Assembly: GCA_964252035.1 (NCBI GenBank)
Contig: OZ176200.1
DNA: 64,000 nucleotides
Reading direction: 5' to 3' (one strand)
Source of the DNA: Podarcis erhardii
Taxonomy: Eukaryota
Each line of letters opens with the position of its first letter. Position 1 is the first letter of the stretch. Both the position numbers and the translations under genes were made by a program. The notes under the pieces are model-generated. The model did no database searches and had not been told where the DNA came from. It saw only the letters and a program-made list of their open reading frames with translations. Shown piece by piece: positions 25,614 through 61,654 of this stretch.

Positions 25614-25651
25614 GTATGAGCTTTCGTGTGCATGCACACTTCTTCAGATAC
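25614..25651 (-). ncRNA. Minimal type I hammerhead ribozyme motif (Penelope pLTR)
   Basis: Reverse complement reads GTAT-CTGAAGA-A-GTGTGC-AT-GCACAC-GAAA-GCTC-ATAC. Confidence 0.8.
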
Positions 25652-26277
25652 ACTGAAACAGAAGTCACCAGACCCTTCTATATAGTGAGAAGGTAGGGAG
25701 GGGTATTACTCAGAAGGGTGGTGGGAATGGGTGATTGGCAGATAGCTGTGATGAGCCTGTTGACGACTCTTAACGACTGCAATACATTGTGTATGCCATC
25801 AAATGCCAACAGTGTCCTTCAGCTCTCTATATTGGACAAACAGGCCAAACCTTACGCCAAAGAATAAACGAACATAAATCTGACATCAGGAATCACAAGA
25901 CAGAGAAACCAGTAGGAGAACACTTCAATCTTCCAGGACATTCTATACAAGATCTCAAAGTAGCTGTTCTATTACAAAGGAATTTCAGAAATAGACTGGA
26001 AAGAGAAGCTGCTGAATTGCAACTTATTACCAAACTTAAAACCATGGAGAGACCTGGTCTGAACAAAGACATTGGATTCTTATCTCATTATACATGACAA
26101 AGCCATTTTTCACCTTCTCACCCCTTGCTTTTTCCTGTAAGACCTATTGCAGTCGTTAAGAGTCGTCAACAGGCTCATCACAGCTATCTGCCAATCACCC
26201 ATTCCCACCACCCTTCTGAGTAATACCCCTCCCCACCTTCTCACTATATAGAAGGGTCTGGTGACTTCTGTTTCAGT

Positions 26278-26315
26278 GTATCTGAAGAAGTGTGCATGCA
26301 CACGAAAGCTCATAC
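26278..26315 (+). ncRNA. Minimal type I hammerhead ribozyme motif, sense in SLC49A4 intron 2
   Basis: Stem I GTAT/ATAC, core CUGANGA and GAAA, stem II GTGTGC/GCACAC, palindromic AGCT in place of stem III, predicted cleavage after CUC at 26311. Confidence 0.8.
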
Positions 26316-27810
26316 CAAGAACTAACTTAGTTGGTCTTTAAGGTGCTACTGGAAGGATTTTTTTTTATTTTGTTTTGACTATGGCAGACCAACACGGCTA
26401 CCTATCTGTAACTGCAATAGGTCTTACATGAAAAAGCAAGGGGTGAGAAGGTGAAAAATGGCTTTGTCATGTATAATGAGATAAGAATCCAATGTCTTTG
26501 TTCAGACCAGGTCTCTCCATGGTTTTAAGTTTGGTAATAAGTTGCAATTCAGCAGCTTCTCTTTCCAGTCTATTTCTGAAATTCCTTTGTAATAGAACAG
26601 CTACTTTGAGATCTTGTATAGAATGTCCTGGGAGATTGAAGTGTTCTCCTGCTGGTTTCTCTGTCTTGTGATTCCTGATGTCAGATTTATGTCCGTTTAT
26701 CCTTTGGCGTAAGGTTTGGCCTGTTTGTCCAATATAGAGAGCTGAAGGACACTTTTGAAGGTAAACTTGCTTGCCCAATTACTAGCTCAAAGGAAAGTTA
26801 ATGCAAATTAATTCTAACTTCAAGATTTTGATTTGGCCACAAAGCTTATTTTTTAAAAATCAAAAAATCAGGTGTTCTAGTTTGGCTTTCACAAACTTTA
26901 GTCTTGAGGCAAAGGATAAGTAATTGATTATTTCATAATCCCCTCTGTTGAAATGTTCTTCTTATTTTCTTTCATAGTTTTGGTTTCAGGCTTGTTATGA
27001 AAAGCTTCATACTCTTAGATTGAACTCTCAGAGTTCACTATGTTGCTTGGTACCTGAAAATAATTAGCTGAATATTGGAAAAGTAATGTATAAACCTGAG
27101 CACAGAGTATAGAAATCGATCAAAATACATCTCTTACCTTAGCCAGTCTTAAAAATGCTTTCCTATCGGTCCAAGTGCGGAACAAAATTGTCTTGCTCTT
27201 CTCATCTTTCATACAAAAGACATCTTGCATTACAGAATCAAACTTAAATTACAGTATTAGGCAGTGAGGGAAAATGCAGTTGCTCTTTGCTCCTTCTGGA
27301 TAACAGAAACAAGAAGAAAATGGGGAAATAACGGGAACAAATGTTTCTAATCTCAGAGCAATTTTTAGAACAGATGATGGTTTGTAAGAAAGAGTTCCGA
27401 TAGTCCTTTCAGGCTGAAATCTGCTGCAGTGATAACAAGACACCATAAAAAAAGCAAAATGCACTGATACTGTTGTGTTCATATTTTTCTGTCAGCTATA
27501 TTAGCTGCTACAAATTTGTCTTCTAGAATAGTAGTAGATTACTCCATACATTGAACCATATCATGGGTATCTCCTATCTGTCCGTCTCTAGAAGATAAGG
27601 TGGAGATACACAAAAAACCCCAATGAAAAGTGGCTTAATTCTGACAGAGTTCATAAATCAGTGAATTAATACAAGTATGTGGTAGAGAGATTTCAACAAG
27701 GCTTCTGGTTTTGTTATTTGGAATGTATAAAGGCAGTAAATGCTGGGAAATGGAAGAGGACAGATTGTCGGTGGTTGGGAGTGTTTACTTCAAACCTCTT
27801 CCAAAGTGAA

Positions 27811-27840
27811 TTAATAATAATAATAACAATAATAATAATT
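27811..27840. repeat. (AAT)n microsatellite, likely the tail of a reverse L2/SINE remnant
   Basis: TAATAATAATAATAACAATAATAATAAT followed by TTATTTGTATCCTGCCCT. Confidence 0.7.
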
Positions 27841-30800
27841 TATTTGTATCCTGCCCTCCCCGGCCGAGGTCGGGCTAAGAGCCGCAAACATCATAATTAG
27901 GTTACTGACTTATCACCTAGCTTATACATCCCTCCATGACATCCACTTTTATAGAGTGAAGGAAAATATAATAAGACAAACCTGCAAAACAAGTGAAAAA
28001 AAGATGCTTACTAGTGCTCCAGAACTGGTCTGTGACCCCAATAATAAAATTTATTTTATTTACTAGTGCTAAAAATTACTTTCCTTTTCAGAATGATCCT
28101 CCATGTCACACAACTTGAATAATGGATCTGCTAAATTACCCACTGGGAATTGTTACACACCCTGAGGTGAACAGCTAACTTGGGGGGCTGCTTCAGACAG
28201 AGTGTAGAAACTGGGAATCTAAGGCTGCAATCCCGTACCAATTTACCAAAAGTAAGGCCCACTGAACTTAGCAGGACTTACTTCTGAATAAGCTGCGTAG
28301 GATTGAGCTCCACGTATTTCAAGATGTCTGTTTGTTTGTTTGTTTGTTTTGAACACTTGTTCCTGCTCTTTAGCCAAAAGGGACAGGGAGGGGATAGAGA
28401 AAAAAGCAAATTTTGATACCAATTCTTAAATAGTAGTTCTTATAATAACCAGCTGGTATTGGAACAGCTCAGGGGTAGGAGGCGTGTGATGGAGCTGGTC
28501 TTTTGGCAGAGCAAGCTGATCTTTCAGGGTGGAATGAACCCTGTTTCCAATCTCCTCATCGTGCATGCCTGCAAAATATCTCTGCCAAAAGCATTATTTG
28601 GCAATCCAACAGATGGCAGCCCTATATATACTTGCTTGTTTACAAATTCAGTTTTTACCTTGCACCTTCAAGGTCCAATAATTACCAGGTCAACTAACAG
28701 ACAGTATAAGAGAATAAAAGGAAACAGCAGCAATATGTCATTAAAAAGCATTGTGGGGAAGGGAATTCTCATCTGGTACCAAGCAATCTTCCAAAGGCAT
28801 GAAAGCAGCACCAAAAAACGCCAGTCACCATCTGCTGCATGTCAGAAGGCAGGGTGTCTGGAGGAGAACCTTAGATGATGATCTTAGTGAGCAGGCAGAC
28901 TGGTATGAGAGAAAGCACTCCAATAAATACGGTATATTGGTACCAAACCCTGTATAGGGCTTTTAATAGGTTAATGCCGGCTCTTTTAATTGAGTTCAGA
29001 AACTAACTGAGAAACTAATGAAGATATTTCAGTACAGGTAATGGTGTCACAGTTTCCATCCTTGGGCCACTCTAGTTGTGAGGACAACAGGGTCATTGCA
29101 TTTTAAAGCCAGGGTTGTACAAGTCATTAAATGCCTTGGAATCATTTAATCAATCACAAAATCAGTAAAGGCTGTTAAAAGGGGCAACTAGTTTGGTTCA
29201 GTGAAGTGAACTAATGTATTTGTTGAGTAGAATTAAGTCTGAAAGTCCTGCATTTAAATACCATGTCTATTTCATGCTGTAGCCACAAGGGTAGATGAGA
29301 GAGGATTTAAGCAGGGAGAACGTTTGGTGTTCCACATTAGACAGCAAAACATATTTGGGAGGGAGAGAGGGAGACCTACTGCTTTTAGAGGCAGCAATAT
29401 GTTGATCATAGCATGGCTGAGAAGATGCATGGCCGGCAGGAGTGGGGGGGGGGCAGCAAGTTCTGTTTTGAGTTTCTGACAACAGTCCACTTGGTAGAAG
29501 CAGCAACTTTCTTTTATCACTTCCCTCTTACTTCCTCCCGCCCCCTTTCTAATCAGAGAGAGAGAGAGTGACTTGCTGCACAACTGTCATCTTCTCAAAG
29601 TGTCTGCCTTTTCTATTTGTTACTATGTTAAGCAGTCACGTACCTTATTACTTAACATTGTGGAAACAGTGACAATTGAGGCTCTTCGGCATGTCATTCT
29701 CATTGTCTTTGTTGATTATAATGTTTTGATGGAAGGCTTTGGAACTTTATAATCTGCTGTTTTCCCCATATGTAACCCTTTCTCTCTTTTGTTTATACAT
29801 AGTGTCAGTGAAAATTACGTTTGCAGCTTGCATAAACTGGATAATACAGCTTCATGCATCCATCATGTTGTGATTCCAGTTTGCACATACAACCCAATCT
29901 GAGTTCTCTTTTCACTGTCCCAATGTGTGCGGCAGTATTTGAGGTGGTTTCTTCGTAACAGATTTCCCTAGTACAAAATAACAGAGCAATTCCAGATTTC
30001 AGTCCGAAGTGATTTTGCTAATTTATGTTTTGTTTCTATAAATGATTACTGAAATGCATACATTTGTATGATGGAATGTATTTCAATCCACCTCAATATA
30101 GAGCAGATAATGAATTCTACTGTATGTTGTTAATCTTCTTGGGGAATTTACATTAGAGAGGAGATAATTGACTACATTGGAAGCAGACCAGTATGTCTGC
30201 CCCTGCAAAAGTATGACCATTGTTTAATTATTTGCTAAGTGTTTGGGAGTTTAGTTTTGCATATTGCCAAGAAGGAGCATATGGCTGCCTAACACTGCAT
30301 TGGCATATTATTTCAGTGACAACAAGGCTGGAGAGATTGTATGGCCTCTGGAATTGTATATCAAAGGCCTTAGATTGTATAATTGTGCAAAGTTATTAAT
30401 CTTAGTTTACAACAGAACTCTTAGCCTTCAGTATGTATGTCACAGCATAATGATAGATTCCCACTCTTTCTCCTCTGAGATCTCTTTTTAAGTTTTGTTG
30501 TGAAATCCTTGATTACCTTAATGTCCCCCCCAAATAATAAATAAAAAGGAATTGACATGTTCATCAAACTTAAAGAACACACACACACCTGACAGTGCCT
30601 TGTACTTAAACACTACATCATAAAACCTTAATGTTTGTCAGATTTTCTGTTCTCTAAATTCTAAACGGATTCAATGCTGCGAGAGATTTAATAGCAGCTA
30701 TGCAATCTTTTTTTGACAGATCAGTATTTTTACCAAAAAGTTGGCATGTGTCTCCCCCTCCTCCTCCTGCAATTATTGGAGTACGAATGACATATGCAGA

Positions 30801-31441
30801 AATAACAAAGTTGCCTAGACTTTCCATACCCCAAGGACAGCTGCCTCTTCTTAAAAAGTATTTTGACTTCTTTGTGTGAAGGCTACCGGGTTTATTTGAG
30901 AGAACCCAAATAATACAACAGCTTCTTACCAGCATATAGTTGTTTCCCCACTGAATGTCATTAGTTAAGATTGACAAATGTCATTGTATTTCAAGTTGCA
31001 TTTTAGAAAAAGGAGTATAGGAAAATCTAACTCTTCTCAGTTTGTATTACAGAATGTTTTTAGCCTGCTGAGAAATTACTTATGTATCAAGGAGACTGCA
31101 CCAAATCAAATAATCTAACCCAATTAACTTTAAAATATTGGTACCATAATCTGTTAGGTAAACAAATTTAATCTCTTAGATTTTTACCAATATTAGTAAC
31201 TAATTAGTCATAGTTGACATTGACCCCACTCCTTCACCTGACTCATCTGGCATGTGGAGAGGATTTGGGGCAAAGGAAGAGGCAGGTTCTGCTTTCATTC
31301 CATGTCTTGGAAATGCTCAGCAGCAGCGACAGTATCTCAAAATTGTCTCCAAGTGTGGTATGAAGGGAGAAACTTACCCCCACCCACCGTGGTAGCTTTG
31401 TGCCTGGCCAGTAAATGTCTTGTGTTGTGCTTTCTCCCTAG

Positions 31442-31704
31442 GATGATCCACGGAGGACAGCTGTTGAATGGATTGGCAGGCCCTACTGTCACTAGCGCTG
31501 CTCCATTCCTCTCCACTACATGGTTTTCACCAGATGAGCGTGCCACCGCCACAGCTGTTGCATCATTGATTGGTTACCTTGGTGGAGCATGCGCTTTTTT
31601 AGTAGGACCCTTTGTGGTTCCAGGACCGAATGGCACATCCACAGTTGCACCTGGAAGCAGCCCGGAGCATATCAAAGACCGCATTGAGGCTGTGTTGTAC
31701 GCAG
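31442..31704 (+). CDS. SLC49A4: SLC49A4 coding exon 3
   Basis: Acceptor TTTCTCCCTAG|G, donor GCAG|GTATCC. 263 nt, encodes [41 protein letters not shown]...GPNGTS...[12 protein letters not shown]. Includes the luminal N-glycosylation sequon NGT. Confidence 0.96.
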
Positions 31705-34700
31705 GTATCCAGAAGTAATTTCACACTTAATTTCATAATGTGCATCCATTAGGAGTTTGCTGGTGCCCTCTAGTGACTCCTCTGAAAATAAATCTCCATG
31801 ACTGTGAGCTCTAGAATGATTTGCCCTTAATTGTAAGAGCCAAACACTGGTTGTGGGGTGTGTAGCTGTTGATCTTACTGTTGACTTGAATATCGCCAGT
31901 CATTCCAGAGGTAATACCTCTTTCAGACTTCCCAAGCCAGACAGTTCCTCCAGCAAACATTTCATGAGATGGTTTAGTTCTGCTTTTCTCAATAACTGTT
32001 TTTCATAAGTCAGTAAAGTCCAGAATGAATTGCTTTCCTCTGTAAATCATTTTTAAGTTACCTTCAAAATATTTTTATTTTTATGTAGATTTTTGTCTAC
32101 ATAAAAATGGTAGGAAACTGCTTTATCACAGTAAATAGTTGTGTTAGGCCCCATCATTTATTTTAGCCCAAACACAAATGCCTTAAACTGATTTTCACAA
32201 AATTCAAAATGCTACCTCCGAATACATTGGTCATGCAACTTTTTCAGGAATGATATTGTGAGCAGCGTTTAGCAGAATTTTAGGATCCTGATCATGAGGT
32301 ATTCTCTAGAAAAGAAGAATTGCTTTGATCTTTGATTTAAGAAGAAATACAAAATAAAATCTTTAATAAACAAATGTGAATGGCCAATTCAGACTTAATT
32401 TGTTTTGGTGTCAGTGTTCACAGCTATCTTCCAGGGGTCAATAATTGAGCACAATTGGTTCCATTTTGGCTCCAATAGGCAGAAAAAGCTTTGCCTCTGA
32501 TGTATTTCTAAAGGCAGGCAGCCCCAGACCTCCAGGGCAGCCACTAAGAAGACATTTCCCTTATTTATGAATGTGATGCAAGGGTGGTAGCAAGTCTAGG
32601 CTGGGATTGAAAAGGAACACAAAGGAAAAGTAGTCTGCAGATTGTAGCTCCCCCCCCCCCCTTTACAAGTTTATATTAACAAGCAGATGCTAACTGGAGG
32701 TATGCTGGCTGTTTAGCTGTAAAAATAAATATTCAGTCAGTCAGTCATTCATTCATGTTGACTGGAGACGAAATGGCTGGAGTGTTGTGTTAATGCAGAA
32801 ACATTAAAATGTATCTGTTAGGCATGTGTTTGTATTAGTTGTTAGTTGGAAAGTTACAAGTAACCAAGGAATATAAAAGTAGTTGGTTTTTCAAGAGGAA
32901 AACTTTGACTTCCACTGGTTTCCATAGCTGGGAACTGCTTAAAATGTATTCTCACTTCTTGTGTACCTACTGGACCTTTTAATTTGTTGTTTGCCTTACA
33001 TATTGATCTGATTTGATCATTAAAGCCTTTGGCAATGAGGGCCAGGACACTAACTGCCCACAGCACCAATGTAGTATAGCTAAAAATGACAAACTAATTT
33101 TGCAGGCCGACCGGCAGATGTAAACTTTCAGCTGTTGTGAATACTTTGCATACCGGTATATTGTATTTTATTTAAATATTTATCAGTCCTTTTCTGAACC
33201 AAGCTCCCAAAAGATAGGGAACAAAATATAAGAATCAGAAAAACAAAATAAACCAACAATATATTAAGTGTATCTCAGCTGGTATAAAACAACAAAACAG
33301 CAGCATGGTGAATAAAACATATACATTAAAATCAATATGAAAACTTCTGAAATAGCAACTGGTGCCCGCCAATGTAGTCTCAGTTTATTTATTGATTGTA
33401 TTTTAAAAATTCCTAATCCGCCCTCTATCAGAACATGTTATCAGGGCAGGATATTATCACATAAACAGAAATTTAAAATACAACAAAAAATTCAGAGTAG
33501 ATAAACAATAAAACAGTGACTACAGACCCAGGCCATATTTGCCACTAGAGAGAGTGTATTATAATAATAATGCTGCTGCTGTATCCAGCACAGTAGTTAT
33601 GCTTGTGAAACGGGGTTCTGTTTCATCTCCTTCCCTGCACATCTCCAAAATCTGCTCTGTAGGGTCCCCCAACGCTCTGGAAATAATTTGGGTATTTGTG
33701 GGAGGCTGGATAGAACAGAAGAGGAAAAGGAAGTTTATTGTGTTGGTCTGTTGTGTGGGTAGAGCTGTAACACTGGATTTAGCCCATATAAAACTAGAAA
33801 TATTTACCCTTCACTTAGCAGACCTGTCAAACTCTTTGCATCATACTCATTTTTTTCTCTCGAAAAAAGGGGAACGAGTTTGGGGGTTTGGGGTGAGTGA
33901 TGATACTGACTTTTTCAGGACGTGTTGCCTTATCACAGAATGCTTTTTCTTTTAGCTTTTCGCATTGTGGTTATTGATTCTTTAGTGTAAAGAAGCCAAT
34001 ATTTATAGGGCATTGGGACAACCTTATATATTAGAATTGGGCAGGGAAGGCAGTTGGGCCAAATGTTGTATGTTCTTGTAAATGGCTGCTTGAGATTAAT
34101 TTGGCTGCCACTAGGCAGGTACAGCTGAATAAAGCTGAATGAATTTATGTAGACCTGCTTGCTGGTTTTACTGAAAACATTTGAGTTGAATCATTGTTTC
34201 TTCATTGATGTGACTTTGTATAAAACTCTGCATTGGAAAAGCTATGTGATTTGTACCATAGTTCTCTTGATCAGGTTGCTCCTACATTTTTGAACATGGG
34301 ATGCTAAAAGTAAACACCAGGAACTGGGAGGTGCTTCTGTGGTTTTCTGTTGCACATGCTTCCTTTTGAAGCATCAAGGACTTTTAATTTGTCAGATACA
34401 GGATACCGACTAGGGGCCACTTCTGTCTGGTCTTCTGTTTGGATTCAACTTTAGTGGATAATGCCATGACTATTGCCTTCGTTTTTCATATGTTCTGACC
34501 TCCTCTGCTTCATCCCTACATGGTTTGTCCCTTCTGCTGACACATGCTTTCAGACTCTATTCTTAGATTTAATTACTTCTGTGCTAGTATTGGAACCCTA
34601 TTTGAAGCTTAAATTTAAAGCCATGGATGGACTCCAAATAGCATATTAGGCTGCTATGAACCCCATACTCTTGTTGTTCCATCAGATGCTCACATAGCAT

Positions 34701-35225: not shown

Positions 35226-35382
35226 NNNNNNNNNNNNNNNNNNNNNNNNNNNNNNNNNNNNNNNNNNNNNNNNNNNNNNNNNNNNNNNNNNNNNNNNNNN
35301 NNNNNNNNNNNNNNNNNNNNNNNNNNNNNNNNNNNNNNNNNNNNNNNNNNNNNNNNNNNNNNNNNNNNNNNNNNNNNNNNNN
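35226..35382. other. Assembly gap (N run)
   Basis: 157 consecutive N. Confidence 0.99.
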
Positions 35383-35666: not shown

Positions 35667-35717
35667 TGATAATAGGATAATAATAGGATGATGATGATGA
35701 TAGCAGCAGCAGCAGCA
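35667..35717. repeat. Compound (GAT)n(GCA)n microsatellite just upstream of exon 4
   Basis: ATGATAATAGGATAATAATAGGATGATGATGATGATAGCAGCAGCAGCAGCA. Confidence 0.75.
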
Positions 35718-35757
35718 TCTACCATAACGGTTTGTTTTTCCCTTTGTATTCCCTTAG

Positions 35758-35887
35758 AATTTGGCTTTGTGGCCTTGATATTCTCTGCAGCCCTTGCCTA
35801 CTTCCCATCACGTCCTCCATTTCCACCCAGTGTAGCTGCAGCTAGCCAGAGGCTCAGCTACAGAAGAAGTTTTTGTAGGCTATTAAG
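35758..35887 (+). CDS. SLC49A4: SLC49A4 coding exon 4
   Basis: Acceptor TTCCCTTAG|AA, donor AG|GTATGT. 130 nt, encodes (E)[42 protein letters not shown](S). Confidence 0.96.
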
Positions 35888-38800
35888 GTATGTATACTTG
35901 GGCCAGCTTGGTACAGGAGGTCATGGCACTCCTGCCCTTTTTGTAATGTTTGTGGGTTTTAAAATAATATTGTAAGCTACAGTATTAAGCTACAGTATGT
36001 ATTGTAGTGTGTTGTATTGTAAGCTACAATACATACTGCTTTTCCAGGGTGCAGTCTTCCACAATTTTGAAATTACGTAGTCTCAATTACTATGGTACAA
36101 CAAATTGACTTTATAAGAGAAAGGCATTTTAAAAGCCAGTGAAACAGATTAGTTTGTTCATGTTGACTAAGAAGCTGAATCAGTTCTCTATTTTTAGTGA
36201 AGATTTTGTGTATCTTCATCGAAGCAAAATGAAGTCTCCTTACTAGTGTTGGACCTTACCAGTCAAGCCTAAATTGTGCAAGGAAAATGAACTATGCAGC
36301 ATTTTTTGTTTTTAAAAGTTTTTCTAAAACTGTAGGGAAATACATTCAGGAATCATTTCTATAGTTCTTTACTTCTAGAGAAGTTAATTTGAAGGTGGTC
36401 TGCTAAGCAAACTATGAGGAGTCAAGTTTTATTTTCTGAGTGTGAACTGAGTGGGTAGCAAAATGTATCTGTTACTTACTATTGATGACCGTTCTGCCAT
36501 CCTTATATAAGAAGATTGACAAGAGGAAACAGAGACTGAGTGGAGAGATAAAAACATCGGGGTGTGTGTGTGTGATCCTTTCTACTTTGGGTGGCGCACC
36601 AATGAACAGAGTGATTCCCCCATAAGACTTAATAATTCCTGTTTATTCTCTACTTAACCTAAACTTTCAAATATACCTTTGGAAATAATCACTAGAAGCT
36701 TACTCTTTCTTAAGGCAAAAACAGAGCTTCTCAGGGAACCTTCTTTTGCAGACAAACCTGTGTTCTATGCTTTTTCTGCATGCTCACAAAATTATACCAT
36801 ACGCCCTTGCTATACACTAATACATGATTCCTCATTTATATTCTCATCATTTCCTGACACGCCTTAGAAACTCAAGAGAAGATAATCTCTCAAATGATTT
36901 ATTCTTCTTCCCAGAGAACTTGAGTACTGCAAGGACAGAGAAGAAGAGACCCTAATTCCTCTGTTAATTGTGGCTTATATTTTTTGGGTCCCAAAATGGA
37001 ATTAGCCAGTCAGTAGAAACTGAGGAGTATGCGAGATACTGTTTTTTATATATAAAGTATCAATTTCCATTTAGGACACTTGGCACCATTTTTGCTGCTG
37101 TCACCTGAGAGCCAGCCTCCTTGTCTGCCTGCGGGCTGTGTTGTAAAAATGTTACTGTCAAATAAAAACCTGAATAACAGCTGGACCTGCAGGTGGAATA
37201 TAAAATGCCTATTGACAGGGCTCCATCTGGGAGCTATGTTAATAAAATGGATGCTTGTTCATAATATTCTAAACGCTAAATCTGAGATCCCTGTAAAGTT
37301 GAATGGAGAACTACAAAAGTTCAATTTTACCAGCTTTTTAAAGATAAAAGAAAAAAGAATACACTCCTATACTTACATACTGAATATATTTCTGTCTATG
37401 AGGCTGTAATTTGAAATGCTGGTCACGATTAATAATGTAAGAGCAGACTAATTCTTTGTTGGCTATTTCCCTTTTAAGAAGCCCTTGGAACTTACTCTTT
37501 CATTTACCTTGTACACTATATTTTCCTGACCTTCCAAATGCTTCTTCTTAATTTTTTGTCTCTTGAGTAGATGTGTATGTGTGTAACTAACCTGTCACTG
37601 GACGGATGTTTTAAATGGTTTTGGGAGAATTGTGAGGGTAAAATGGGGAGGAGAAGCATCTACACCACCTTGAGCTCCATATATAAATGAAATAAATAAA
37701 TACAGATAGTGCCTAGTATGCAAATTGTGTATGCTGTGCAAATATAATAATCTCAAAAGCTGTTGCCTTCAGAATTCTTCATGTGCTATCAGAGCGTATA
37801 CTGGTCAGGTTTAATCACGGCATTGTTATTTAGAATCTAGACAATGAATGAATAGTGCAGAAATTTTTCTCTTGAACTATTGTAGTTACTGGCCAGTAAG
37901 TGATTCGCATTGAGCTGCGTGTTGTGTTGTGTAAGCTCGTTTAGGAATATGCAGTGGTGTTGTTTTTTTGGATATCAGCAATACGCTGCTGCTGTTGCAT
38001 CCTTGCTTCAGTGCAAACTGGGGTGTTGGTGTTGGCGATTCATCCTCTGTGCATCCTATTCAGTGTCCTTTCTTTTCTATTTGTAATATTTGTGCTGAAG
38101 TGTGCATCAACATTGATGTCCGTGTTGTGTGATCAGTGTACAATTTCATTAGCTGTGTCAGCTCATGCTTGTTTGCCTACCGTATTTATCTGCCACTTTT
38201 CAGATAAATGTCACGGAGTAGTTTACATCAAGGCTGGGGAACCTGAAGGCCCACCAGATGTTCTTGGGCTAGCTACCATCATCTCTGGTTATTGACAGTC
38301 CTGGTTGGGCAATCATATCTGGTATATGGTTCCCTAGCCCTAACTTACATAAAATATTAATTCAGTAAGTACTACTAAAACTATGTAATAAAACAATAAA
38401 GACAAGCAGCAGAAGGAGAAACCCTATAGAGAGTCAAATTTCCTCTCAGAGAAGGATATTAAATAAATGGTATGTGTTTGGGTTTCCTTGTTTTCTGAGT
38501 GGAGTCTTGCGTTCACAATAACTGGTTCAAGGATTGTATTGGGTTCTTGTTATGTACCATAGGTGGTCCCCACTCCATTGTGTCCCCCCACCACTAGCAT
38601 CGCCTCTGATTCTTCTGCTGTGCTTGCGTTGGCCCACCATTGTAGTGTCTTCAAACACTTTGCTGAAGCATGACTTGTGATGCTGCACAGGTGGAGCTGC
38701 AGGCATTGCACTTGGTGCTGTTCACCCAGAATGGATGAGGCTGTTTATCATAGCTATTAATGGAAGGTGTTTAATCATTTTTGTCTAGAGTAAGTAGCTT

Positions 38801-42855: not shown

Positions 42856-43551
42856 TATTAGTGTTCTACAAAGTGAAAGCACATTAAAGTAAATGCAGGG
42901 CCCCAGTAGCACTGGGTGAATAAAAAATGCTGGGGGCACCACTGAGCAAGTGACCGTAAGTTTGTTCGTTCCCTCAGCCTAATAAGCACCTCTGTGAACC
43001 GTCCAATCACACACAGTTTTTTTTTTTTTTTTTGTTGTTTTTTTGGGAGAGAGAAGCCAAACAAACTCTGTCTCCATGAGACACTGAAGTGGAATACCTG
43101 GGTTACTTTGAAGATTATTTTGTGGGGATGAGGTGCCCTTGTAGTTTTTCCACCATACTGTTTCAGCTTGTAACCCCCCCCCCAATGAATCAGGCTTATA
43201 AGACAAGACAAAGCAATTCCTTTCAGCTCTTTAGTGTCCCTCAATATTTGTCCTGCTACAAATTTCCCTCTAAAATATGTGGTAACAACATCTGAACATG
43301 ACAGAATTCCATCCACAAGCTGTGACTTCTTGCAATAGTTATGTGACTGCAGAGGTACTTAACCTTTGATAAGCCTTTAGTGTTTATATATGGTGCTATT
43401 TAGATTTAGTTATTGATTTAATTCCATTTCCTAGTTTCCTAATAAAAGTTTTCTCTGGGTGACATGCACAGTGAAGTCAACAAAGTTAAAACAGAACAAC
43501 TTGATAATCTTATATTGGCAAAACTGTTCCTAATTATTATTTTCCTTTCAG

Positions 43552-43660
43552 CAACCCACGGTTTCTGATGATTGCTCTAGCCTATGCTATACCATTGGGT
43601 GTTTTCTCGGGATGGTCTGGTGTTCTAGACTTGATATTAACCCCAAAGGACATAAGCCAA
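43552..43660 (+). CDS. SLC49A4: SLC49A4 coding exon 5
   Basis: Acceptor TTTTCCTTTCAG|C, donor CAA|GTATGT. 109 nt, encodes [36 protein letters not shown]. Absent from the ORF track; read by hand. Confidence 0.96.
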
Positions 43661-43899
43661 GTATGTATATGTGTATATTGTTTAGCTTCGCTTATGCATC
43701 ATAGGCAAAATACTGGTTTTGTTACTGGTAACTGAACCAACCAAGCAAGATGCACTGGAGACTATGTCCTGCTTTTGTAGTAAAAGTGCCAATGGGTTTG
43801 AGTTGAAATAGATGCTGAAAACATTTGCAGATAACAGAGGCTAAGGAAAAAGGATAACACTGGCGTCTTTTGAAATGTGTGTATTAACATTTTTAAAAA

Positions 43900-45130: not shown

Positions 45131-45143
45131 ACGGGGGGGGGGG

Positions 45144-49877: not shown

Positions 49878-49959
49878 TATTTCAAAGTGTTGTAGCAATT
49901 TGGCTAAAGTTTACAGAATTTGTGAAGGGTTTGTTAATTGTGATTTGTGTTCCTTTCAG

Positions 49960-50087
49960 GTTTGCCGATTTTATCCGAGGAATGCTGAAACTTATACTGC
50001 TTCTGTTATTGTCAGGAGCAACTTTGTCATCCATCTGGTTCACTTTGACGTGTTTAACAACTGTCAGTCATCTTCCTTTAACTACAG
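49960..50087 (+). CDS. SLC49A4: SLC49A4 coding exon 7
   Basis: Acceptor TTCCTTTCAG|G, donor ACAG|GTATGC. 128 nt, encodes [42 protein letters not shown]. The expected next exon (TLYASCILLG-like) was not found before 64000. Confidence 0.96.
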
Positions 50088-51159
50088 GTATGCTAATGCC
50101 CAGCCTCGTCAAATAAATGGTTTTGGTAGCGGTTCTTAGATATGTGAGATGTTGGAAAAAGAAGTTATATTGCAGATTAATTTTCAATAAACTGTTTTAA
50201 TTCTGTGGTGCTGCTGGGCAGGGGAGATTGGCATTCATTGTGGGATTTTTATTTTATTTTGGGGGGGGGGTCACTTCTGAACCCCCAGTGCTACAATGTA
50301 ACTCAAGCCACTTTGTAATGTATAATGAAGCAGAGGAGACAGCTGTCAGAATTGACAGTGTAAGACCAATTCACATATGCAAGACTGGACTCTTGAAATC
50401 TTCACGTCCATTGACTGAAGTCATTATGTCCATTGATTTCAGTGAGTCTACTCTGAGTGTGACTTACTCAGATACAACCCATACATTAAGCTGGAAGAAC
50501 TCCCTGTGTCGCCATAAACAAGTTAAAGTAAAAGAAAAGGCAATAAGAAACTAATTTTATTTAGTGATATAAAGCCAACAAGGGGAATTTTGAAGTTCAT
50601 TAAACTGACGTGTCTTTGACAAGGTTTTCAAGACTCCTGTTAGCTGGCTATAAACATTGGTTAAAACAAGTGATTAATTCTAACCCTTTAGCCCGACCTG
50701 CTTGGAATTCCATTGGATAATAGTGTGTTTTGTGGTTACTTATCTGGGAACACAAGTATGTAGGGAAATAATAAGCTTGTAATACGTCAAACTAATTAAC
50801 TTGCCATTTCCCCTTTACTTGTTTTGTTACACCCCCTTTGTATATTACAATAGGTATTATGTATGAAGTACAGGTTGTCTATAGTAATGTTAAGTCAGAC
50901 AAAAAGTATATGTGGTTATTTAGTTTTGAACTAGACTGGGCAAGCATTTCTGAAATTTCTTTGTTTTGATATCATAGGCTTCCCCTACCCTACCCTACCC
51001 ATCTCTTCATCCCACTTTTTTTTTGCAGGGGTTGGGTGGGTTCTCATACCTTCTTGTATCTATATCTTGGGGAGATGCTTGAACTGAAATCCTGGATAGA
51101 AATTCAGTATATCTGTATAGTAACTAAACTTCACACCACAAATATGTATCGTCTAATGA

Positions 51160-53348: not shown

Positions 53349-53497
53349 GGGATAGCTCAGTCAGTAGAGCTTGAAACTCTTAATCTCAGGGCTGTGGGTT
53401 CGAGCCCCACGTTGGGTGGAAGATTCCTGCATTGCAAGGGATTGGACTAGATGACCCACGTGGTCCTTTCCAACTCTACAGTTCTTTGATACTATGA
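53349..53497 (+). mobile_element. tRNA-Lys-derived SINE with CR1-like tail
   Basis: GGGATAGCTCAGTCAGTAGAGC..GA.ACTCTTAATCTCAGGG..GTGGGTTCGAGCCCCACGTTGGG, then GGACTAGATGACC...TTCCAACTCTAC...CTATGA. Confidence 0.75.
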
Positions 53498-54701: not shown

Positions 54702-54950
54702 TCATAGAATCGTAGAATCTTAGAGTTGGAAGGGACCCCCAGAGTCATCTAGTCCAACCCCCTGCAATGCAGGAATCTCAGCTAAAGCATTCCTGACAGG
54801 TGGCCATCCAACCTGTGCTAAAAAACCTCCAAGGAAGGAGAGTCCACCACCTCTCATGGGAGTCTGTTTCACTGCTGAACAGCTCTTACTGTCAGAAACT
54901 TTTTCCAAATGTTTAGTTGGAATCTCCTTTCTTGCAACTTGAAGCCATTG
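54702..54950 (-). mobile_element. CR1 LINE 3' fragment
   Basis: TCATAGAATC..AGAATC.TAGAGTTGGAAGGGACC...TCTAGTCCAACCCCCTGC is the reverse complement of the CR1 3' terminus and continues into an ORF2 remnant. Confidence 0.8.
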
Positions 54951-57822
54951 CAACATTGAAATGGAAACACCCAGCCTTTTCTTGCTGCATTTGCTAGAGA
55001 CAAAGTTTGCCTATTTCAAACTTAACCACATAGCATTTTAAATACACAAACATAACTTTTTATGTACATTGAACTAATATCCTTAAGATGAACTTCATGG
55101 TTTTTAGACTTTTTTATTGTGCAACTGAATATTATATGGATGCAATGCATTCTCTTGATTTAGATATTTGTATAGTTTTGTTCTGAAGCTCCTGTCTCAC
55201 ATCCACACTAAGTGATATAAGGATGAAAGCAAACCAGCTATTTAAGTGCTAATTTATAGGGCTTTGTGTGGTCTCTTTATTCCTGACCATAACTATGCAA
55301 TATAATGGCAACCTTTGTGCTCTGGAGTAATTGAGGGAAATGGCACGATTTAATTGATTTGGTTGAACTTATTCTTTTTTCTGTTAATTAAAAGTTCCAG
55401 GGTGTGTAGCATGTAGCTCAGATAAAGTATGGGAGTTCAAATGCAGGGCAGTGCTTGGTGACACTCAGGCTTTGGGGAAGGAATGTGAGATGGCTGGTTA
55501 AGAAGTCAGAGCTGGTTCAGCATTAATGCCAGAGCAGCTTTGCATTGACAGTGGAGGTTGCACAGGGCATTGGCAATCTTTTTTAAACGATGAAGAGGGA
55601 ATACACTGTGTATAACAAAAGCAGTTTATCCATGTGTCCAAAGTATCTAATTTAGCATTCCCAGTAATACTTCACATTTTCAGGGCAATTGTATGTACGC
55701 CAATTATTTGATAATGGTACTTGCTGTATGGGGAGAAAGCAAAGTCAGAAGCAGCCATATCCAAATTAGTTTCTAGGTTATACTTCCGAAGGGCTGCCTA
55801 TCCATCAGGTTTAGGTAAACGAGAACTTCCAATGGTAAGGCTTGTAAGTCACTGCAAACCTGCAGCATGGGACTTTTTGTCCCTTTCCTGTATCTCTGAG
55901 AAATTCCTTATTGTTCTTATAGTACATCCATCACTCTCACTGCTCAGAATATGCAAAAGTACTATTCTGCCAATGCTACATATTTTAGAAAGATATAACA
56001 TCAAACTAAATCTCTCACGTTATCAAGCTGGTTTCATAAGCTTTTGATTGGAAGCACCTGAAGGAGCCTTCTAGTAGAAAAGGTGAGTGGCTTGGAAAGT
56101 TCTTAAAATTAGATGTTAAGTTATACTCCTAGTCAAGCATACTAGTTAACCAAATAGATCAAGATAAACATTATTTGTAGGATTATGCTGAATGTTCTCT
56201 CATTTCACTTTTGAAGTAAAGCAATGCTTTCATGATGGGCAAAAGATACCTGCCCAGAGAAAAACAACCTTATGTATGTTCACATTATTTTGAACCTCTT
56301 AGCAGGAAATGGGAAGAAACAAATGGCAGCAGTTTGTGCCTTTTTTCCTTTGTAGAAGGATTTATTTAGGTCTTCTTTTTCCTTAATAGAGCCATTCATA
56401 TAATGAATGGATGACAATGCTATGTAACCAATGTGTTTTGCTATGTAGCTAATGTGTTACTATTTCTGATAATCCCAAATAGCAAATATTACTAAGCAAA
56501 AGCAAATCAAAGTCAATTCATAGTGCTGCTTCTTTGATTACTCAAATGGTGATTTTAGCTGAGGGATCACATCCTACAGAACAGAATTGCATCATGGTGC
56601 TGCTGTGAATCGAGTCATACCTAGCTACATGTTGATGTCTGTGAGGGAACACAAATCTCATCCAGAGTGAGAGGGTAGCAGTTCCTGAATAGCTGAGGAA
56701 TTCGGTCCACTTTTGAAGCAACCACTGAAACATTGCCTAATGTATGGAGAAAGCTTTTAATACTGGCAAAAATGTTTAAGAAAAAATATCCCTACTTAGT
56801 GCATAAAGGGGGATGAGAGAGAGAGACTCTGCTAAAAGCAACACTGCTGAATGAAGGCTACTATGGGTACAGTCCAGCCCAAGTAAAGTCTGTTTACATC
56901 TAATTGATTTTAATGAGGCAGACTTAAGTCTTTGATTACTTCTATTGAAATAAATTAGACTTAGAATTTGTCATATTTGTGCTTTTATTTGTGGCCTTGC
57001 AGTGTAGTTTGCATTACCTAGAGTCATCCTCTTAATTTTTTCAATGGTTTGGAATTCTAAAGGACATTCCATTGTCCTTGATCTACTACTGTTAAGCTCA
57101 TTGGTTCAGCTGTGATAGAGACAGATCTCCTCCTTCAGTTCGGCCATAGTCTTCCTTCTATTCGTCTGTGGGAGAAACAGTAACAAACTCTGCACCCCAA
57201 GGCAGCTTCAGTCAGCTAGCCATTGGCAGAGAGCTGACAGGCCCTGCAATTTCCAGCAGTAGCTGTGCCACCAGAGGCCATGTGAAGTGGCTCATAGTCA
57301 TGAATCATCCCTTCCCTACAGCAGTAACAGCCAAGCTAAAACTGTGCTAAATTCTACAGGTGAACTCTTTGGCTTAACTGCTGCCATTCTCTGCTGGACT
57401 GCTTGCCTCAGAAGTGTGGGAAAATGGCTGTTTGTACATAAGAGCATGGGCGAAAGTTTATTATTGCAGGGTGATTTCGTAGCAGGAGGCATCGCATGGA
57501 GCATGAACGGCACGTGAACAGCTCATGCTGTTCCAATGATTGGTTCACGTAGCATGGCCTGATCGACTACGTGGCCTGGTGTGATGGCATGATGCCCATG
57601 TATGGTGTTGTCTTTATCTGCCGGCTGAGGAAAAAGTTACCTTTTGGAATTTGTATGGTTCTATTGTGCACAATAAACGCTGAGCTGCAGCAGTCAGACT
57701 TTTTCAACCCATCTTGGTGTGAGACTGATTATTACTGATGGCGAGCAGGTTCTCGTCCCAGAAGGTCTGCTCCTCCTTTCAAACTTGTTAAGAGTTAGAT
57801 CATGCACAGAGAACCCTTATAA

Positions 57823-59710
57823 CACTGGTCAACAACAAATTTATTGTCTGCATTTTTTCAGTTGATTTAGGATGAATTTGATGCGCTGAATCTGAAAATC
57901 ACATTGGTTTTGCTCAATCAGGTCAAGTTTTTGAGCTACAGCCACGTGTCTTTTTTTACGTTTTTGTTCACATGTACGCTTGTGTGGAGCATTTTAGAAG
58001 AAGTTGGTGGGGGTAAAATGCCATGTCGAATAATTGTTTTGATTGGAAATGATTATTTTAATGACAATAAGTATTCAGGTCCGATAGTTCTGTGTGATTA
58101 TGTCGAAAAGGGATCAGTTTGAAGTCATAAAACCTCAAAATCTTCCATAAATTGGTGCGGATCCATAAATTGGTGGGATCAACAGAAAGAACCGGAGCAG
58201 CCTCAAGTATCCTGATCTTCAATCAGCACATCATCCTGTAGCTCATTGTGATGAAATTCCAGTGCCTATCTTTGGAGAACTTCCTGACAGTGACGAAGAT
58301 GCCTCCAGTGTTGAAGGACATGAAGAAGAAGAAGTGGTTCTTGAAGATGATGCTCCACATCCATTTTCCCAAAAGGAGTTGAATGATCTAGTTCGTGACC
58401 TCAGCTTATCAAAGGACTCTGCCGAACTGTTGGCATCCAGATTGAAGGAAAAAAACCTCCTCTCTGACAGTGCTCGCATCAGCTTCTTCCGCAACAGGCA
58501 TCAAGAGTACCTTCGTTTTTTCTCGGAAGAGAAGGACTTGGTGTACTGTGCAGATATTGTGCAGCTTCTGCTCAACCTTGGAGTGCTACAGTACGAACCC
58601 AAAGATTGGAGACTGTTCATTGACAGCAGCAAGCAATCACTGAAATGTGTTCTGCTACACAACGGCAACCAGTTTGCCTCTATACCCCTGGCTCACTCGA
58701 GTACACTGAAGGAGAACTATGAAGCGGTGAAGTATGTGCTGGAGAAAATTGGTTATGATCAGCATAAGTGGTTTATTTGTGTTGACCTGAAGATGGTGAA
58801 CTTTTTGTTGGGACAACAGTCTGGCTTCACCAAGTACCCATGTTTTCTGTGCATGTGGGATAGTAGGGACCGTGCTCAGCATTACACGAAGAAGGTCTGG
58901 CCTGTGCGGGAGGAATTGGTGCCTTGCAAAGAAAGGAACGTCATCAACAACCCTCTGGTGGACAGAGACAGAATACTCTTCCCACCCCTGCACATCAAGC
59001 TCGGCTTAATCAAGCAGTTCACCAAGGATGGACAAGGATGGTGACTGCTTCACTTACTTGTGCCAGGCTTTTCCAGGATTGACCATGGAGAAGTTGAAAG
59101 CTGGCATCTTTGACGGTTCTCAGATCCGTCAGCTCATCAGAGGTCCACAGTTCGGAAAGTCAATGAACGAAGTGGAACTGGAAGCTTGGAAGGCATTTGT
59201 TCTGGTAGTGAAGAACTTTCTTGGCAACAATAAGGCCAGAAACTATGCAGAACTTGTCAACAACATGCTGACTGCTTTCAGAAACCTGGGCTGCAACATG
59301 AGCGACAAGATGCACTACCTATTTTCACATATGGACCAGTTTCCTGAGAACCTGGGTTCAATGAGTGACGAGCAGGGGGGAGAGATTCCATCAGGACATG
59401 AAAGAGATGGAGACCAGGTATCAGGGTCGCTGGGACGCAGTCATGATGGCTGACTGCTGTTGGATTCTGAAGAGAGACCACCCTGCCGCTGAGCATTCCA
59501 GGAGTTCCAAGAAACGGAGTTTGAAAAATGGTGAAGCAACATGCAATTTACGTGTACTTACCTTTATCAATGCCCACCATTCAGTTTACAGTAAACCTGA
59601 CCTGATGGAGAGAAACGGATGCCATTTCCTGATTCAGCAGTGCAAAAATACCCTAAATCAGTTGTAGAAATCTAGACAACATTCAAAAAGTAAAAAATTG
59701 TTGCCCAGTG
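57823..59710 (+). mobile_element. Chapaev3 (CMC superfamily) DNA transposon, internally deleted
   Basis: TIRs CACTGGTCAACAA and TTGTTGCCCAGTG (12/13 match). 3-bp TAA TSD at 57820-57822 and 59711-59713. Imperfect subterminal inverted repeats. Encloses a transposase pseudogene. Confidence 0.85.
58175..59525 (+). pseudogene. Chapaev3 transposase remnant (two frameshifts, N-terminal zinc-finger region missing)
   Basis: Motifs FSQKELNDLVRDL, WRLFIDSS..SLKCVLLHNGN, PCFLCMWDSR, PPLHIKLGLIKQF, NFLGNNK, HYLFSH, SDEQGERFHQD, MMAD.CW. Frameshifts near 59026 and in the G run near 59375-59380. The C-terminal boundary is approximate. Confidence 0.85.
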
Positions 59711-59835
59711 TAATCACTTTTAGACTGTCCAAGTAGAGTACAGTAGTAAGACATGTGGCGGGAGACAGTGTGTTTCTGAATAGCAGTGATTTGAAGCCAC
59801 AGGAGGGGAGAGTGCTCTTGTAGCTCTTGAAAACC

Positions 59836-60301
59836 ATTTGTTTTCAAGCAGTGTGCTGTGGTATCCTGGGGTACCTTGAATACTGGTCAAGGGTGTCGCA
59901 GGCAACACTGGCCTCTGTCCCTCTTCCCTTCCCTTCCTCTTCTGATGCCCTCTTGCGTCTCTGCCTCCCAAAGGCTTGCACAGCTGTTTATTGCAGCAGC
60001 CCTGGCTATAAACTCCAGAAATAAATGGTGCCTCTGGGAGGTGCCTTTCTTTGGGATGGGGGGCAGCTCAGAGACCTGGAGCAGCAGCAGCAGCAGCAGC
60101 TGCCCAGAGGACTCCCAAGGAAGGAGGAGAGGAGGCTGAGAGAAGACTCCACAAGGGAGGGTGTTCGAAAAAGAGTGAGAGAGGCTGCCAGCTCTGCAGG
60201 CAAGGGGTAACATAACTGGGCTCCTGAGCCCCACAAGCGTGCCACAAAAAGAATGTAGTTGGTCAAGGGAGCTGTGGACTCAAGAAGGTTGAAAACCTCT
60301 G
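59836..60301. mobile_element. Possible degenerate non-autonomous hAT element containing (CAG)n
   Basis: The right end AAGGTTGAAAACCTCTG is hAT-like. The left end CATTTGTTTTCAAGC is a weak match and no TSD is visible. Confidence 0.3.
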
Positions 60302-60713
60302 CCTCAGTCAGTTGAACCTCCTAAGTAAATACCATCAAACCCACAATGAGAAAATGACCACACTGGCAGAGCCCTCACTCGATAAAATACTATGTTGTGG
60401 GTGTATTTATTTCTTTTCAGGGAACATATGAATATTTTATGGCAATATTAGCACATGTTCCATTCTTAAATTGCCTATAGGTTCATACATGTCAATAGAT
60501 TATCTTTAGCTCTGAGAAAGCCTTGCCTGGTTGTGGAATCATTTTCTAACATGCAGACTTAGGCACCTGCATACATTAAAAGTTGTATTCTTCTGTTAAG
60601 TTTGCTACCCAAATTATACAGTTGCATGTTCACCTGCAATCTGTGCCCTTGTAACTAGAAAAAAAGCAAATTCCTTCCAGTAGCACCTTAAAGACCAACT
60701 AAGTCAGTTCTTG

Positions 60714-60751
60714 GTATGAGCTTTCGTGTGCATGCACACTTCTTCAGATAC
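60714..60751 (-). ncRNA. Minimal type I hammerhead ribozyme motif (Penelope pLTR)
   Basis: Identical 38-nt motif on the minus strand. Confidence 0.8.
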
Positions 60752-61616
60752 ACTGAAACAGAAGTTTCCAGACCCTTCTATATAGTGAGAAGGTGGGGAG
60801 GGGTATTACTCAGAAGGGTGGTGGGAATGGGTGATTGGCAGATAGCTGTGATGAGCCTGTTGACGACTCTTAACGACTGCAATAGGTCTTACAGGAAAAA
60901 GCAAGGGGTGAAAAGGTGAAAAATGGCTTTGTCATGTATAATGAGATAAGAATCCAAGGTCTTTGTTCAGACCAGGTTTCTCCATGGTTTTAAGTTTGGT
61001 GATAAGTTGTAATTCAGCAGCTTCTCTTTCCAGTCTATTTCTGAAATTCCTTTGTAGTAAAACAGCTACTTTGAGATCTTGTATAGAATGTCCTGGGAGA
61101 TTGAAGTGTTCTCCTACTGGTTTCTCTGTCTTGTGATTCCTGATGTCCGATTTATGTCCGTTTATTCTTTGGCGTAAGGTCTGGCCTGTTTGTCCAATAT
61201 AGAGAGCTGAAGGACACTGTTGGCATTTTATGGCATACACAATGTTAGACGATGAGCAATTAAATAGTCCCGAGATGGTATGTGTGATGTTGTTGGGGCC
61301 AGTAATGGTGTTGTCCGGGTGTATGTGGCAGCAAAGTTGGCATCTGGGTTTATTGCAGGCTCTGGTGCCAGTGTCCGTGTTAGGTCTGGTTGTAGTATTA
61401 TTGTGGGTTAGGAGTTGTTTAAGACTGGGTGGCTGTCTGTAGGCAATGAAAGGTCTTCCTCCCAGAGCTTGAGAAAGAGAACTGTCATTGTCCAGGAGAG
61501 GTTACCTCCTTGCTTTTTCCTGTAAGACCTATTGCAGTCGTTAAGAGTCGTCAACAGGCTCATCACAGCTATCTGCCAATCACTATATAGAAGGGTCTGG
61601 AAACTTCTGTTTCAGT

Positions 61617-61654
61617 GTATCTGAAGAAGTGTGCATGCACACGAAAGCTCATAC
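61617..61654 (+). ncRNA. Minimal type I hammerhead ribozyme motif, sense in SLC49A4 intron 7
   Basis: Identical 38-nt motif; predicted cleavage after 61650. Confidence 0.8.

What the first reader, a model, noticed from the sequence alone, without database searches (positions are those of the whole stretch)
25614..61654. Four identical minimal hammerhead ribozymes from Penelope-like elements, two in sense inside the SLC49A4 pre-mRNA
Seen: the 38-mer GTATCTGAAGAAGTGTGCATGCACACGAAAGCTCATAC occurs with no mismatch at 25614-25651 (-), 26278-26315 (+), 60714-60751 (-) and 61617-61654 (+), although the surrounding copies differ at several positions. It folds as a type I hammerhead: 4-bp stem I, CUGAAGA plus one extra A, 6-bp stem II, GAAA, a palindromic AGCU in place of stem III, and a CUC cleavage triplet. 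Established: Penelope-like elements carry such minimal hammerheads in their pLTRs, and the stem-III-less form is described as cleaving efficiently as a dimer. Inference: every SLC49A4 transcript carries two sense copies 35 kb apart, which could cleave introns 2 and 7 if they dimerise in cis or with transposon RNA in trans.
Basis: partly seen in the sequence, partly recalled or inferred. Interest (0 to 1): 0.75.

Follow-up and report, generated by a model that had tools for sequence, protein, structure and literature searches.

The report
Penelope retrotransposon hammerhead motifs in introns
Four identical minimal hammerhead ribozyme motifs sit in young jumping-gene (Penelope-like) fragments inside introns of a lizard SLC49A4 gene, which is ordinary for this element class, and they most likely do not cut the host gene's RNA.

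Summary
The 38-mer occurs four times without a mismatch at the stated places (0 expected by chance). It has every conserved hammerhead core base and the published Penelope-like "min-HHR" layout.

All four copies lie in terminal repeats (pLTRs) of 5'-truncated Penelope-like elements, next to GIY-YIG endonuclease remnants. There are only three insertions at two loci:
- a plus copy nested in a minus copy at 25.5-26.8 kb;
- one head-to-head inverted pair at 60.7-61.7 kb.

SLC49A4/DIRC2 is on the + strand, so two motifs are sense: one in intron 2, one in the intron after the 50-kb exon.

The identity shows recent descent, not constraint. The arms are 97-99% alike, and zero changes in 38 nt has P about 0.26.

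The proposed cleavage of the host pre-mRNA is unlikely:
- each sense motif is predicted to pair base for base with its antisense twin, and forcing the ribozyme fold costs about 70 kcal/mol;
- the dimer helix III is 4 bp, about -3.9 kcal/mol;
- published Penelope hammerheads cleave poorly, or only with element protein.

Cleavage itself could not be tested, because only contigs were on offer, not raw reads. This scan has already noted this family many times elsewhere in the same genome.

The parts
25614..25651 (-). min-hammerhead copy A, antisense to SLC49A4
   Evidence: Exact match; passes the descriptor.
26278..26315 (+). min-hammerhead copy B, sense, in intron 2; predicted cut after 26311
   Evidence: intron assignment.
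60714..60751 (-). min-hammerhead copy C, antisense
61617..61654 (+). min-hammerhead copy D, sense; predicted cut after 61650
25552..25784 (-). pLTR part of an older minus Penelope copy, without tail; split from its other half by the nested plus copy
   Evidence: Inverted repeat I2; alignment A1.
25785..26413 (+). Nested 5'-truncated plus Penelope copy: GIY-YIG remnant 25789-26097, TATA 26245-26251, hammerhead, 37-nt tail 26377-26413. Flanked by the 9-bp repeat ACTGCAATA (25776-25784 / 26411-26419).
26414..26757 (-). Remainder of the minus copy, with a GIY-YIG remnant (ORF 26467-26778)
   Evidence: Inverted repeat I1, 98%; Pfam PF01541.
60669..61503 (-). Minus arm of the head-to-head pair: tail-less pLTR and GIY-YIG remnant 60932-61240
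   Evidence: Family contigs stop at 61503.
61508..61747 (+). Plus arm of the pair: pLTR with a 46-bp internal deletion, TATA 61584-61590, hammerhead, tail 61711-61747
   Evidence: Loose ends at 61508.
60650..60668 (.). Left copy of the 19-bp target duplication (right copy 61741-61759)
   Evidence: Read directly. A contig of organism B stops matching at 61741.
8265..8672 (+). SLC49A4/DIRC2 exon 1, coding part. Further exons lie at about 19924-20034, 31440-31703, 35757-35885, 43550-43663 and 49955-50089.
   Evidence: MFS_1 and FLVCR1 hits.
35226..35382 (.). Assembly gap in intron 3; touches no part of the finding

Best explanation
The four motifs are the standard minimal hammerhead module of a very abundant, recently active lizard Penelope-like retrotransposon family. 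They arrived in three 5'-truncated insertions. One is a plus copy nested in a minus copy in SLC49A4 intron 2. The other locus is one head-to-head inverted pair in the intron after the 50-kb exon.

Their perfect identity is inherited from a young source element. It is not evidence of selection at these loci.

Whatever the motif does, it does for the element's own RNA: processing as a double hammerhead, probably helped by the element's protein. A TATA box 33 nt upstream probably starts transcripts right at the motif.

Within the host pre-mRNA, each sense motif is predicted to be locked in a long double-stranded hairpin with its antisense twin. It therefore stays inert, and the introns are spliced normally.

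Shown here: sequence, anatomy, element context, host strand, youth, fold energies. Inferred: element-side function, inertness in the host.
For: - Exact copies and core anatomy.
- The layout matches the published min-HHR: short helix I, long helix II, extra base between 9 and 10.1, G10.1-C11.1, palindromic 15.1-16.1. The published account also notes dual motifs 100-700 bp apart on opposite strands and their presence in reptiles (PMC4209133).
- GIY-YIG remnants lie beside each motif.
- A 37-nt optional tail is present on the plus copies only, as described for these elements (PMC11167929).
- The arms are 96.9-99.4% alike, and P(0 changes in 38 nt) = 0.26.
- About 135,000 contigs of one run lie on the 1.5-kb stretch. 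Depth rises from the hammerhead onward, and no alternative letter reaches 10% anywhere in 61508-61654.
- Contigs of two related organisms run on for 378 and 409 letters unlike the element at 61741/61753. This suggests an empty site in those relatives.
- The minimum-energy fold pairs all 38 bases of each sense motif with the antisense twin. Enforcing the ribozyme fold costs 69-70 kcal/mol.
- The AGCU/AGCU helix is worth -3.9 kcal/mol, against -25.2 for the competing helix II palindrome duplex.
- Published Penelope hammerheads show low or protein-dependent activity, and no read ends were found at the site in Anolis RNA-seq.
- Slow hammerhead cleavage inside an intron does not prevent splicing (PMC2995048).
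Against: - No activity measurement exists for this sequence.
- All sequencing runs on offer were contigs, so RNA ends at 26311/26312 and 61650/61651 could not be examined.
- Fold energies are thermodynamic. During transcription the local hairpin forms first, and helicases or proteins may open the long duplex.
- Lunse et al. 2017, the main biochemical paper on dimer cleavage, was not readable here.
- The empty site in relatives is inferred from where contigs stop matching, not from their letters.
Confidence: 0.82

Rival explanations
1. One reading: the two sense motifs cleave SLC49A4 introns by forming a double hammerhead, either with each other or with transposon RNA supplied in trans.
For: Both sense copies have a complete catalytic core. 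The family is very abundant and its pLTR carries a TATA box, so partner RNA may exist. The Anolis Penelope hammerhead cleaves when the element protein is added.
Against: - The sense copies are about 35 kb apart. At typical polymerase II speeds that is about 10-18 minutes, by which time intron 2 should be spliced out (my inference from general knowledge).
- Helix III offers only 4 bp, -3.9 kcal/mol.
- Each sense motif has a perfect antisense partner 0.6-0.9 kb upstream in the same RNA.
- In vitro activity is low even for dimers.
- No read ends were found at the site in Anolis.
- Slow intronic hammerheads leave splicing intact.
Confidence: 0.07
2. The real effect on the host is not ribozyme cleavage. 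Either the inverted arms form long intronic double-stranded RNA (a substrate for editing or small-RNA pathways), or the sense pLTR promoters fire inside the gene.
For: Inverted arms of 233 and 347 nt at 97-98%, and of 130 and 76 nt at 98-100%. Predicted folds are very stable, -503 and -553 kcal/mol. A TATA box lies 33 nt before each motif and an initiator-like TTCAGT lies at the expected distance (read).
Against: No expression, editing or small-RNA data could be obtained. Such hairpins are common in introns and are usually neutral.
Confidence: 0.1
3. The motifs have been taken over by the host as regulated intronic ribozymes, like the CPEB3 ribozyme or the amniote HH9/HH10 hammerheads.
For: Sense orientation within introns; perfect identity of the motif.
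Against: The insertion seems absent in two related organisms. The flanks are as uniform as the motif. The monomer fold is unstable, -6 to -6.8 kcal/mol. The same family sits in many other introns of this genome according to earlier scan notes.
Confidence: 0.01

Closest known systems
Minimal hammerhead ribozymes (min-HHR) of metazoan Penelope-like elements (Cervera & de la Pena 2014, PMC4209133; Lunse, Weinberg & Breaker 2017, cited but not readable here)
   Same: Type I topology; 4-bp helix I; long helix II; unpaired base between A9 and G10.1; G10.1-C11.1 pair; no helix III, only a palindromic AGCU; location in the pLTR; frequent pairs on opposite strands a few hundred bases apart; presence in reptiles.
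   Different: Nothing of substance. Helix II here is a perfect 14-nt palindrome. This family's motif lies about 180 nt after the endonuclease stop codon.
PAc, the Poseidon element of Anolis carolinensis (PMC11167929)
   Same: A squamate Penelope-like element with a pLTR hammerhead, an optional 30-40 bp tail that marks the reverse-transcription start, and a GIY-YIG endonuclease.
   Different: In PAc the ORF starts at helix II and the cut is 26 nt after the start codon. Here the only ATG is in loop II, 16 nt before the cut, and it meets a stop codon after 10 codons. So this is a different family. At both plus insertions here the tail end overlaps the target duplication by 3 and 7 nt, whereas PAc primes without homology in vitro.
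Conserved intronic ribozymes (CPEB3 HDV-like ribozyme, PMC10919898; amniote HH9/HH10)
   Same: A self-cleaving motif in sense orientation inside an intron of a protein-coding gene.
   Different: Those fold as stable monomers, are conserved at orthologous sites and have measured activity. These are young, lineage-specific, need a partner, and are flanked by their own antisense copy.
Non-LTR retrozymes (PMC7229834; bioRxiv 10.64898/2026.07.22.740005)
   Same: Type I hammerheads related to Penelope pLTRs, in the same host groups.
   Different: Retrozymes are tandem arrays that give circular RNAs. No tandem hammerhead repeat is present here.

Membership tests
Hammerhead ribozyme, minimal type I (Penelope min-HHR) | Conserved core C3 U4 G5 A6 N7 G8 A9, G12 A13 A14, A15.1/U16.1, H17 | tested here: met
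   All present in the four copies. H17 = C.
Hammerhead ribozyme, minimal type I (Penelope min-HHR) | Helices I and II base-paired, with a G10.1-C11.1 closing pair and an open helix I | tested here: met
   4-bp helix I; 5-bp helix II plus CAUG loop.
Hammerhead ribozyme, minimal type I (Penelope min-HHR) | Extra unpaired base between 9 and 10.1, and palindromic 15.1-16.1 in place of helix III | tested here: met
   Extra A; AGCU. These criteria come from PMC4209133.
Hammerhead ribozyme, minimal type I (Penelope min-HHR) | Match to a curated hammerhead covariance model | tested here: not met
   No Rfam hammerhead family reached the gathering score or E <= 10. This is expected, because those models include helix III. 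It does not weigh against the minimal class.
Hammerhead ribozyme, minimal type I (Penelope min-HHR) | Site-specific self-cleavage | not testable with these tools
   Only contigs were available, no raw reads. No bench assay.
Hammerhead ribozyme, minimal type I (Penelope min-HHR) | Motif conserved above its flanks, or covariation in the helices | tested here: inconclusive
   0 of 38 against 6 of 171 variable columns, P = 0.26. No 10% variant anywhere in 61508-61654. More copies could not be fetched.
Penelope-like element | C-terminal GIY-YIG endonuclease domain | tested here: met
   PF01541 above its cut-off in three remnants. Relatives are named GIY-YIG in a turtle and a lizard.
Penelope-like element | Telomerase-like reverse transcriptase domain | tested here: inconclusive
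   All copies are 5'-truncated. The longest arm (60669-61503) shows only the endonuclease domain in the part scanned.
Penelope-like element | pLTR with optional 30-40 bp tail; inverted or tandem partial copies; target duplication | tested here: met
   37-nt tail on the plus copies only; a head-to-head pair; 9-bp and 19-bp flanking repeats.
Host-adopted intronic ribozyme (CPEB3 / HH9 / HH10 type) | Presence at the orthologous site in related species | tested here: not met
   Contigs of organisms B and C leave the element at 61741/61753 and run on unlike it. This is indirect.

The most novel reading that the evidence does not exclude
When this still-active family expresses its RT-endonuclease protein, for example in the germ line, protein-assisted double-hammerhead formation with abundant pLTR RNA could cut sense intronic pLTR copies across the genome, SLC49A4 included. 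Alternatively, the sense pLTR promoter at 61584-61614 could launch hammerhead-headed transcripts into the last exons. Either would be a hidden cost of Penelope activity, and it should show as an orientation bias of intronic copies that lack an inverted partner.
Probability: 0.06. Interest if true: 0.55.

Novelty: new member of a known kind. Interest (0 to 1): 0.13.

Why it matters
It matters little for the host gene. The finding is an ordinary example of a published class: minimal hammerheads in Penelope-like element repeats, already reported in reptiles. This scan has met the same family many times in this genome.

The useful general point is that these elements often insert as inverted pairs. 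A sense hammerhead in a host intron then usually comes with its own antisense copy, which is predicted to mask it. That should be weighed whenever an intronic Penelope hammerhead is proposed to cut a host RNA.

The in vivo role of these ribozymes for the element itself remains an open question. These loci cannot settle it.

Tried and rejected
- Rfam at gathering score over the whole window, and at E <= 10 around locus 1, gave no hammerhead family.
- I hoped to see RNA 5' ends at the predicted cut. Every run offered was kept as contigs only, which cannot show ends, strand or level. The runs labelled 'RNA?' are guesses and may be capture DNA, so I drew no expression conclusion from their depth.
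- I tried to collect more copies for a motif-versus-flank variation test:
  - the endonuclease remnant found only 9 short relatives;
  - a 22-mer from the pLTR flank had no match in metagenome contigs.
- The Lunse et al. 2017 paper was not held.
- The PDB search did not confirm the 50-kb exon. The word search did, through unnamed fragments.
- Exon 6 was not located, so the intron number 7 is unverified.
- SLC49A4 was searched exon by exon by reference.
- Chance, tandem retrozyme and host-adopted ribozyme were each considered and rejected, for the reasons given in the report.
Full report
**Observation.** The 38-mer occurs exactly four times, at 25614-25651(-), 26278-26315(+), 60714-60751(-) and 61617-61654(+). 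There are no other copies within three mismatches, and none in 100 shuffles. A relaxed descriptor for a stem-III-less type I hammerhead finds only these four and none in 30 shuffles. That descriptor asks for helix I of at least 3 bp, CUGANGA, an optional bulge, helix II of at least 4 bp, GAAA, a palindromic 15.1-16.1 segment and H17.

The fold is helix I GUAU/AUAC, core CUGAAGA, one unpaired A, helix II GUGUG/CACAC with a CAUG loop, then GAA, then AGCU, then C17. The predicted cuts after 26311 and 61650 are placed correctly. No Rfam hammerhead model matches, even at E <= 10. That is expected for a motif without helix III.

**Assembly gap.** The N run 35226-35382 lies in intron 3 of the host gene. 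Orthologue residues pass without loss from exon 3 (31440-31703) to exon 4 (35757-35885). Nothing in the finding crosses the gap. Only the quoted distance of about 35 kb depends on its estimated length. I did not try to fill it.

**What the copies belong to.** Each motif lies in an arm of an inverted repeat:
- 25552-25784 against 26145-26377, 97%;
- 25807-26153 against 26411-26757, 98%;
- 60659-60788 against 61580-61709, 98%;
- 60831-60906 against 61508-61583, 100%.

Beside the arms are ORF remnants with a GIY-YIG domain above Pfam's cut-off: 25789-26097(+), 26467-26778(-) and 60932-61240(-). Their few relatives include GIY-YIG proteins of a turtle and an agamid lizard.

Reading the junctions gives two loci.
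- Locus 1 is a plus copy (25785-26413) inserted into a minus copy (25552-25784 plus 26414-26757). It is flanked by the 9-bp repeat ACTGCAATA.
- Locus 2 is a single head-to-head pair: minus arm 60669-61503, plus arm 61508-61747. It lies between two copies of a 19-bp target sequence (60650-60668 and 61741-61759).

The plus copies end in a 37-nt extension that the minus arms lack. This matches the optional 30-40 bp 'tail' of Penelope-like elements, which marks the start of reverse transcription (PMC11167929). A TATA box lies 33 nt before each motif (26245-26251; 61584-61590), with an initiator-like TTCAGT in between. This fits earlier scan notes that transcripts of this family begin just before the ribozyme (s1-234773 and s1-234774). 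I checked that only by eye and through the depth step described below.

**Comparison with the literature.** Cervera & de la Pena 2014 describe this same architecture for metazoan Penelope-like elements. [quoted passage not shown] They report motifs in both flanking repeats, frequent pairs 100-700 bp apart on opposite strands, and occurrence in turtle and snakes. The class is therefore already known.

- That paper found low activity even for dimeric and trimeric constructs.
- A later review repeats this (PMC6765202).
- For the Anolis Poseidon element, the hammerhead cleaved only when the element protein was added. It was not needed for insertion in vitro, and public RNA-seq showed no reads starting or ending at the cut site (PMC11167929).
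- The paper by Lunse and colleagues on dimer cleavage could not be read here.

**Host gene and orientation.**
- The stop-free stretch 8265-8804(+) matches proteins named solute carrier family 49 member 4 or DIRC2. The best matches are squamates: Varanus 77%, Gekko 68%.
- Partial orthologues align collinearly on the + strand at 8265-8672, 19924-20034, 31440-31703, 35757-35885 and 43550-43663. MFS_1 and FLVCR1 hits support this. So 26278 lies in intron 2, in sense.
- A further exon at 49955-50089 matches C-terminal fragments.
- The last 90 residues of one such fragment have no match in the window. The gene therefore continues beyond 64000, and 61617 lies in the intron after that exon.
- I did not find exon 6, so the number '7' is plausible but unverified.
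- The exons were searched one by one by reference. I left out the step of joining them.

**Is the identity a sign of constraint?** It is not shown to be. Over 209 shared columns the arms are 96.9-99.4% identical. Six of 171 flank columns vary and none of the 38 motif columns does, which has probability 0.26 at the flank rate.

Laying contigs of four runs from four organisms on 60950-62500 showed several things.
- About 135,000 contigs of the best run match, so the family is extremely abundant.
- Summed depth rises three- to seven-fold from the hammerhead to the tail.
- No alternative letter reaches 10% anywhere in 61508-61654. The whole pLTR is uniform, not just the motif.
- The T at 61655 is private to this copy, and 61663 is polymorphic.
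- Contigs of organisms B and C match the right flank up to 61741 and 61753. They then run on for 378 and 409 letters that are unlike the element. This is what an empty site would give, so the insertion is probably specific to the window's lineage.

More copies for a proper test could not be fetched.

**Would the sense copies cut the pre-mRNA?** Four points argue against it.
1. *Masking.* In RNA spanning each locus, the minimum-energy fold pairs all 38 bases of the sense motif with the antisense twin transcribed 0.6-0.9 kb earlier. Forcing the ribozyme fold costs 69-70 kcal/mol. The antisense copies are thus likely inhibitors, not bystanders.
2. *A weak dimer.* The active double hammerhead depends on a 4-bp AGCU/AGCU helix worth about -3.9 kcal/mol. 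The 14-nt palindrome of helix II offers a competing duplex of -25.2 kcal/mol. The monomer fold is only -6 to -6.8 kcal/mol.
3. *Timing.* The sense copies are about 35 kb apart, roughly 10-18 minutes at usual polymerase II speeds. Intron 2 should be removed before the second copy exists. This is my inference from general knowledge.
4. *Tolerance.* Even if slow cleavage occurred, intron cleavage by a hammerhead did not reduce splicing in vivo. Only a fast ribozyme did (PMC2995048).

None of this is a measurement. All sequencing runs offered were contigs, which cannot show RNA ends, strand or level.

**Verdict.** The functional inference is unlikely. The finding is a new member of a known kind. 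This scan has noted the same family many times elsewhere in this lizard genome, with similar follow-up verdicts.

The one point worth carrying forward concerns inverted-pair insertions. They deliver each sense hammerhead together with its own antisense mask, and they place long double-stranded hairpins and TATA promoters in host introns.

Noticed in passing
window 36334-36544 (+): U3 snoRNA-like sequence, Rfam RF00012 at 78 bits over the full model, inside SLC49A4 intron 4. It could be a gene or a retrocopy.
   Followed up: no
window 53353-53410 (+): tRNA-like match (37 bits, model positions 8-63). Probably the head of a tRNA-derived SINE.
   Followed up: no
window 62170-62399: A 230-bp element with terminal inverted repeats. 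Its word depth is 4-5 times that of the Penelope pLTR in three DNA runs. It is missing from a contig of organism H that spans the site. Many contigs join 62399 back to 62170, so tandem copies exist elsewhere.
   Followed up: partly
window 26407-26419 and 61741-61759: At both plus insertions, the last 3 nt (ACT) or 7 nt (TGTAACT) of the Penelope tail are also part of the target duplication. This suggests microhomology at the reverse-transcription start, unlike the homology-independent priming reported for the Anolis element in vitro.
   Followed up: partly
window 58169-59041 (+): A 291-codon stop-free stretch, acidic, with no Pfam match. It looks like a transposon-derived ORF in the same intron.
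   Followed up: no
window 61574-61781: Summed contig depth over the hammerhead-to-tail module is 3-7 times that of the ORF part in DNA runs, and 20-60 times in a small run guessed to be RNA. This fits many short copies or transcripts that begin at the hammerhead, but contig depth is a poor measure.
   Followed up: partly
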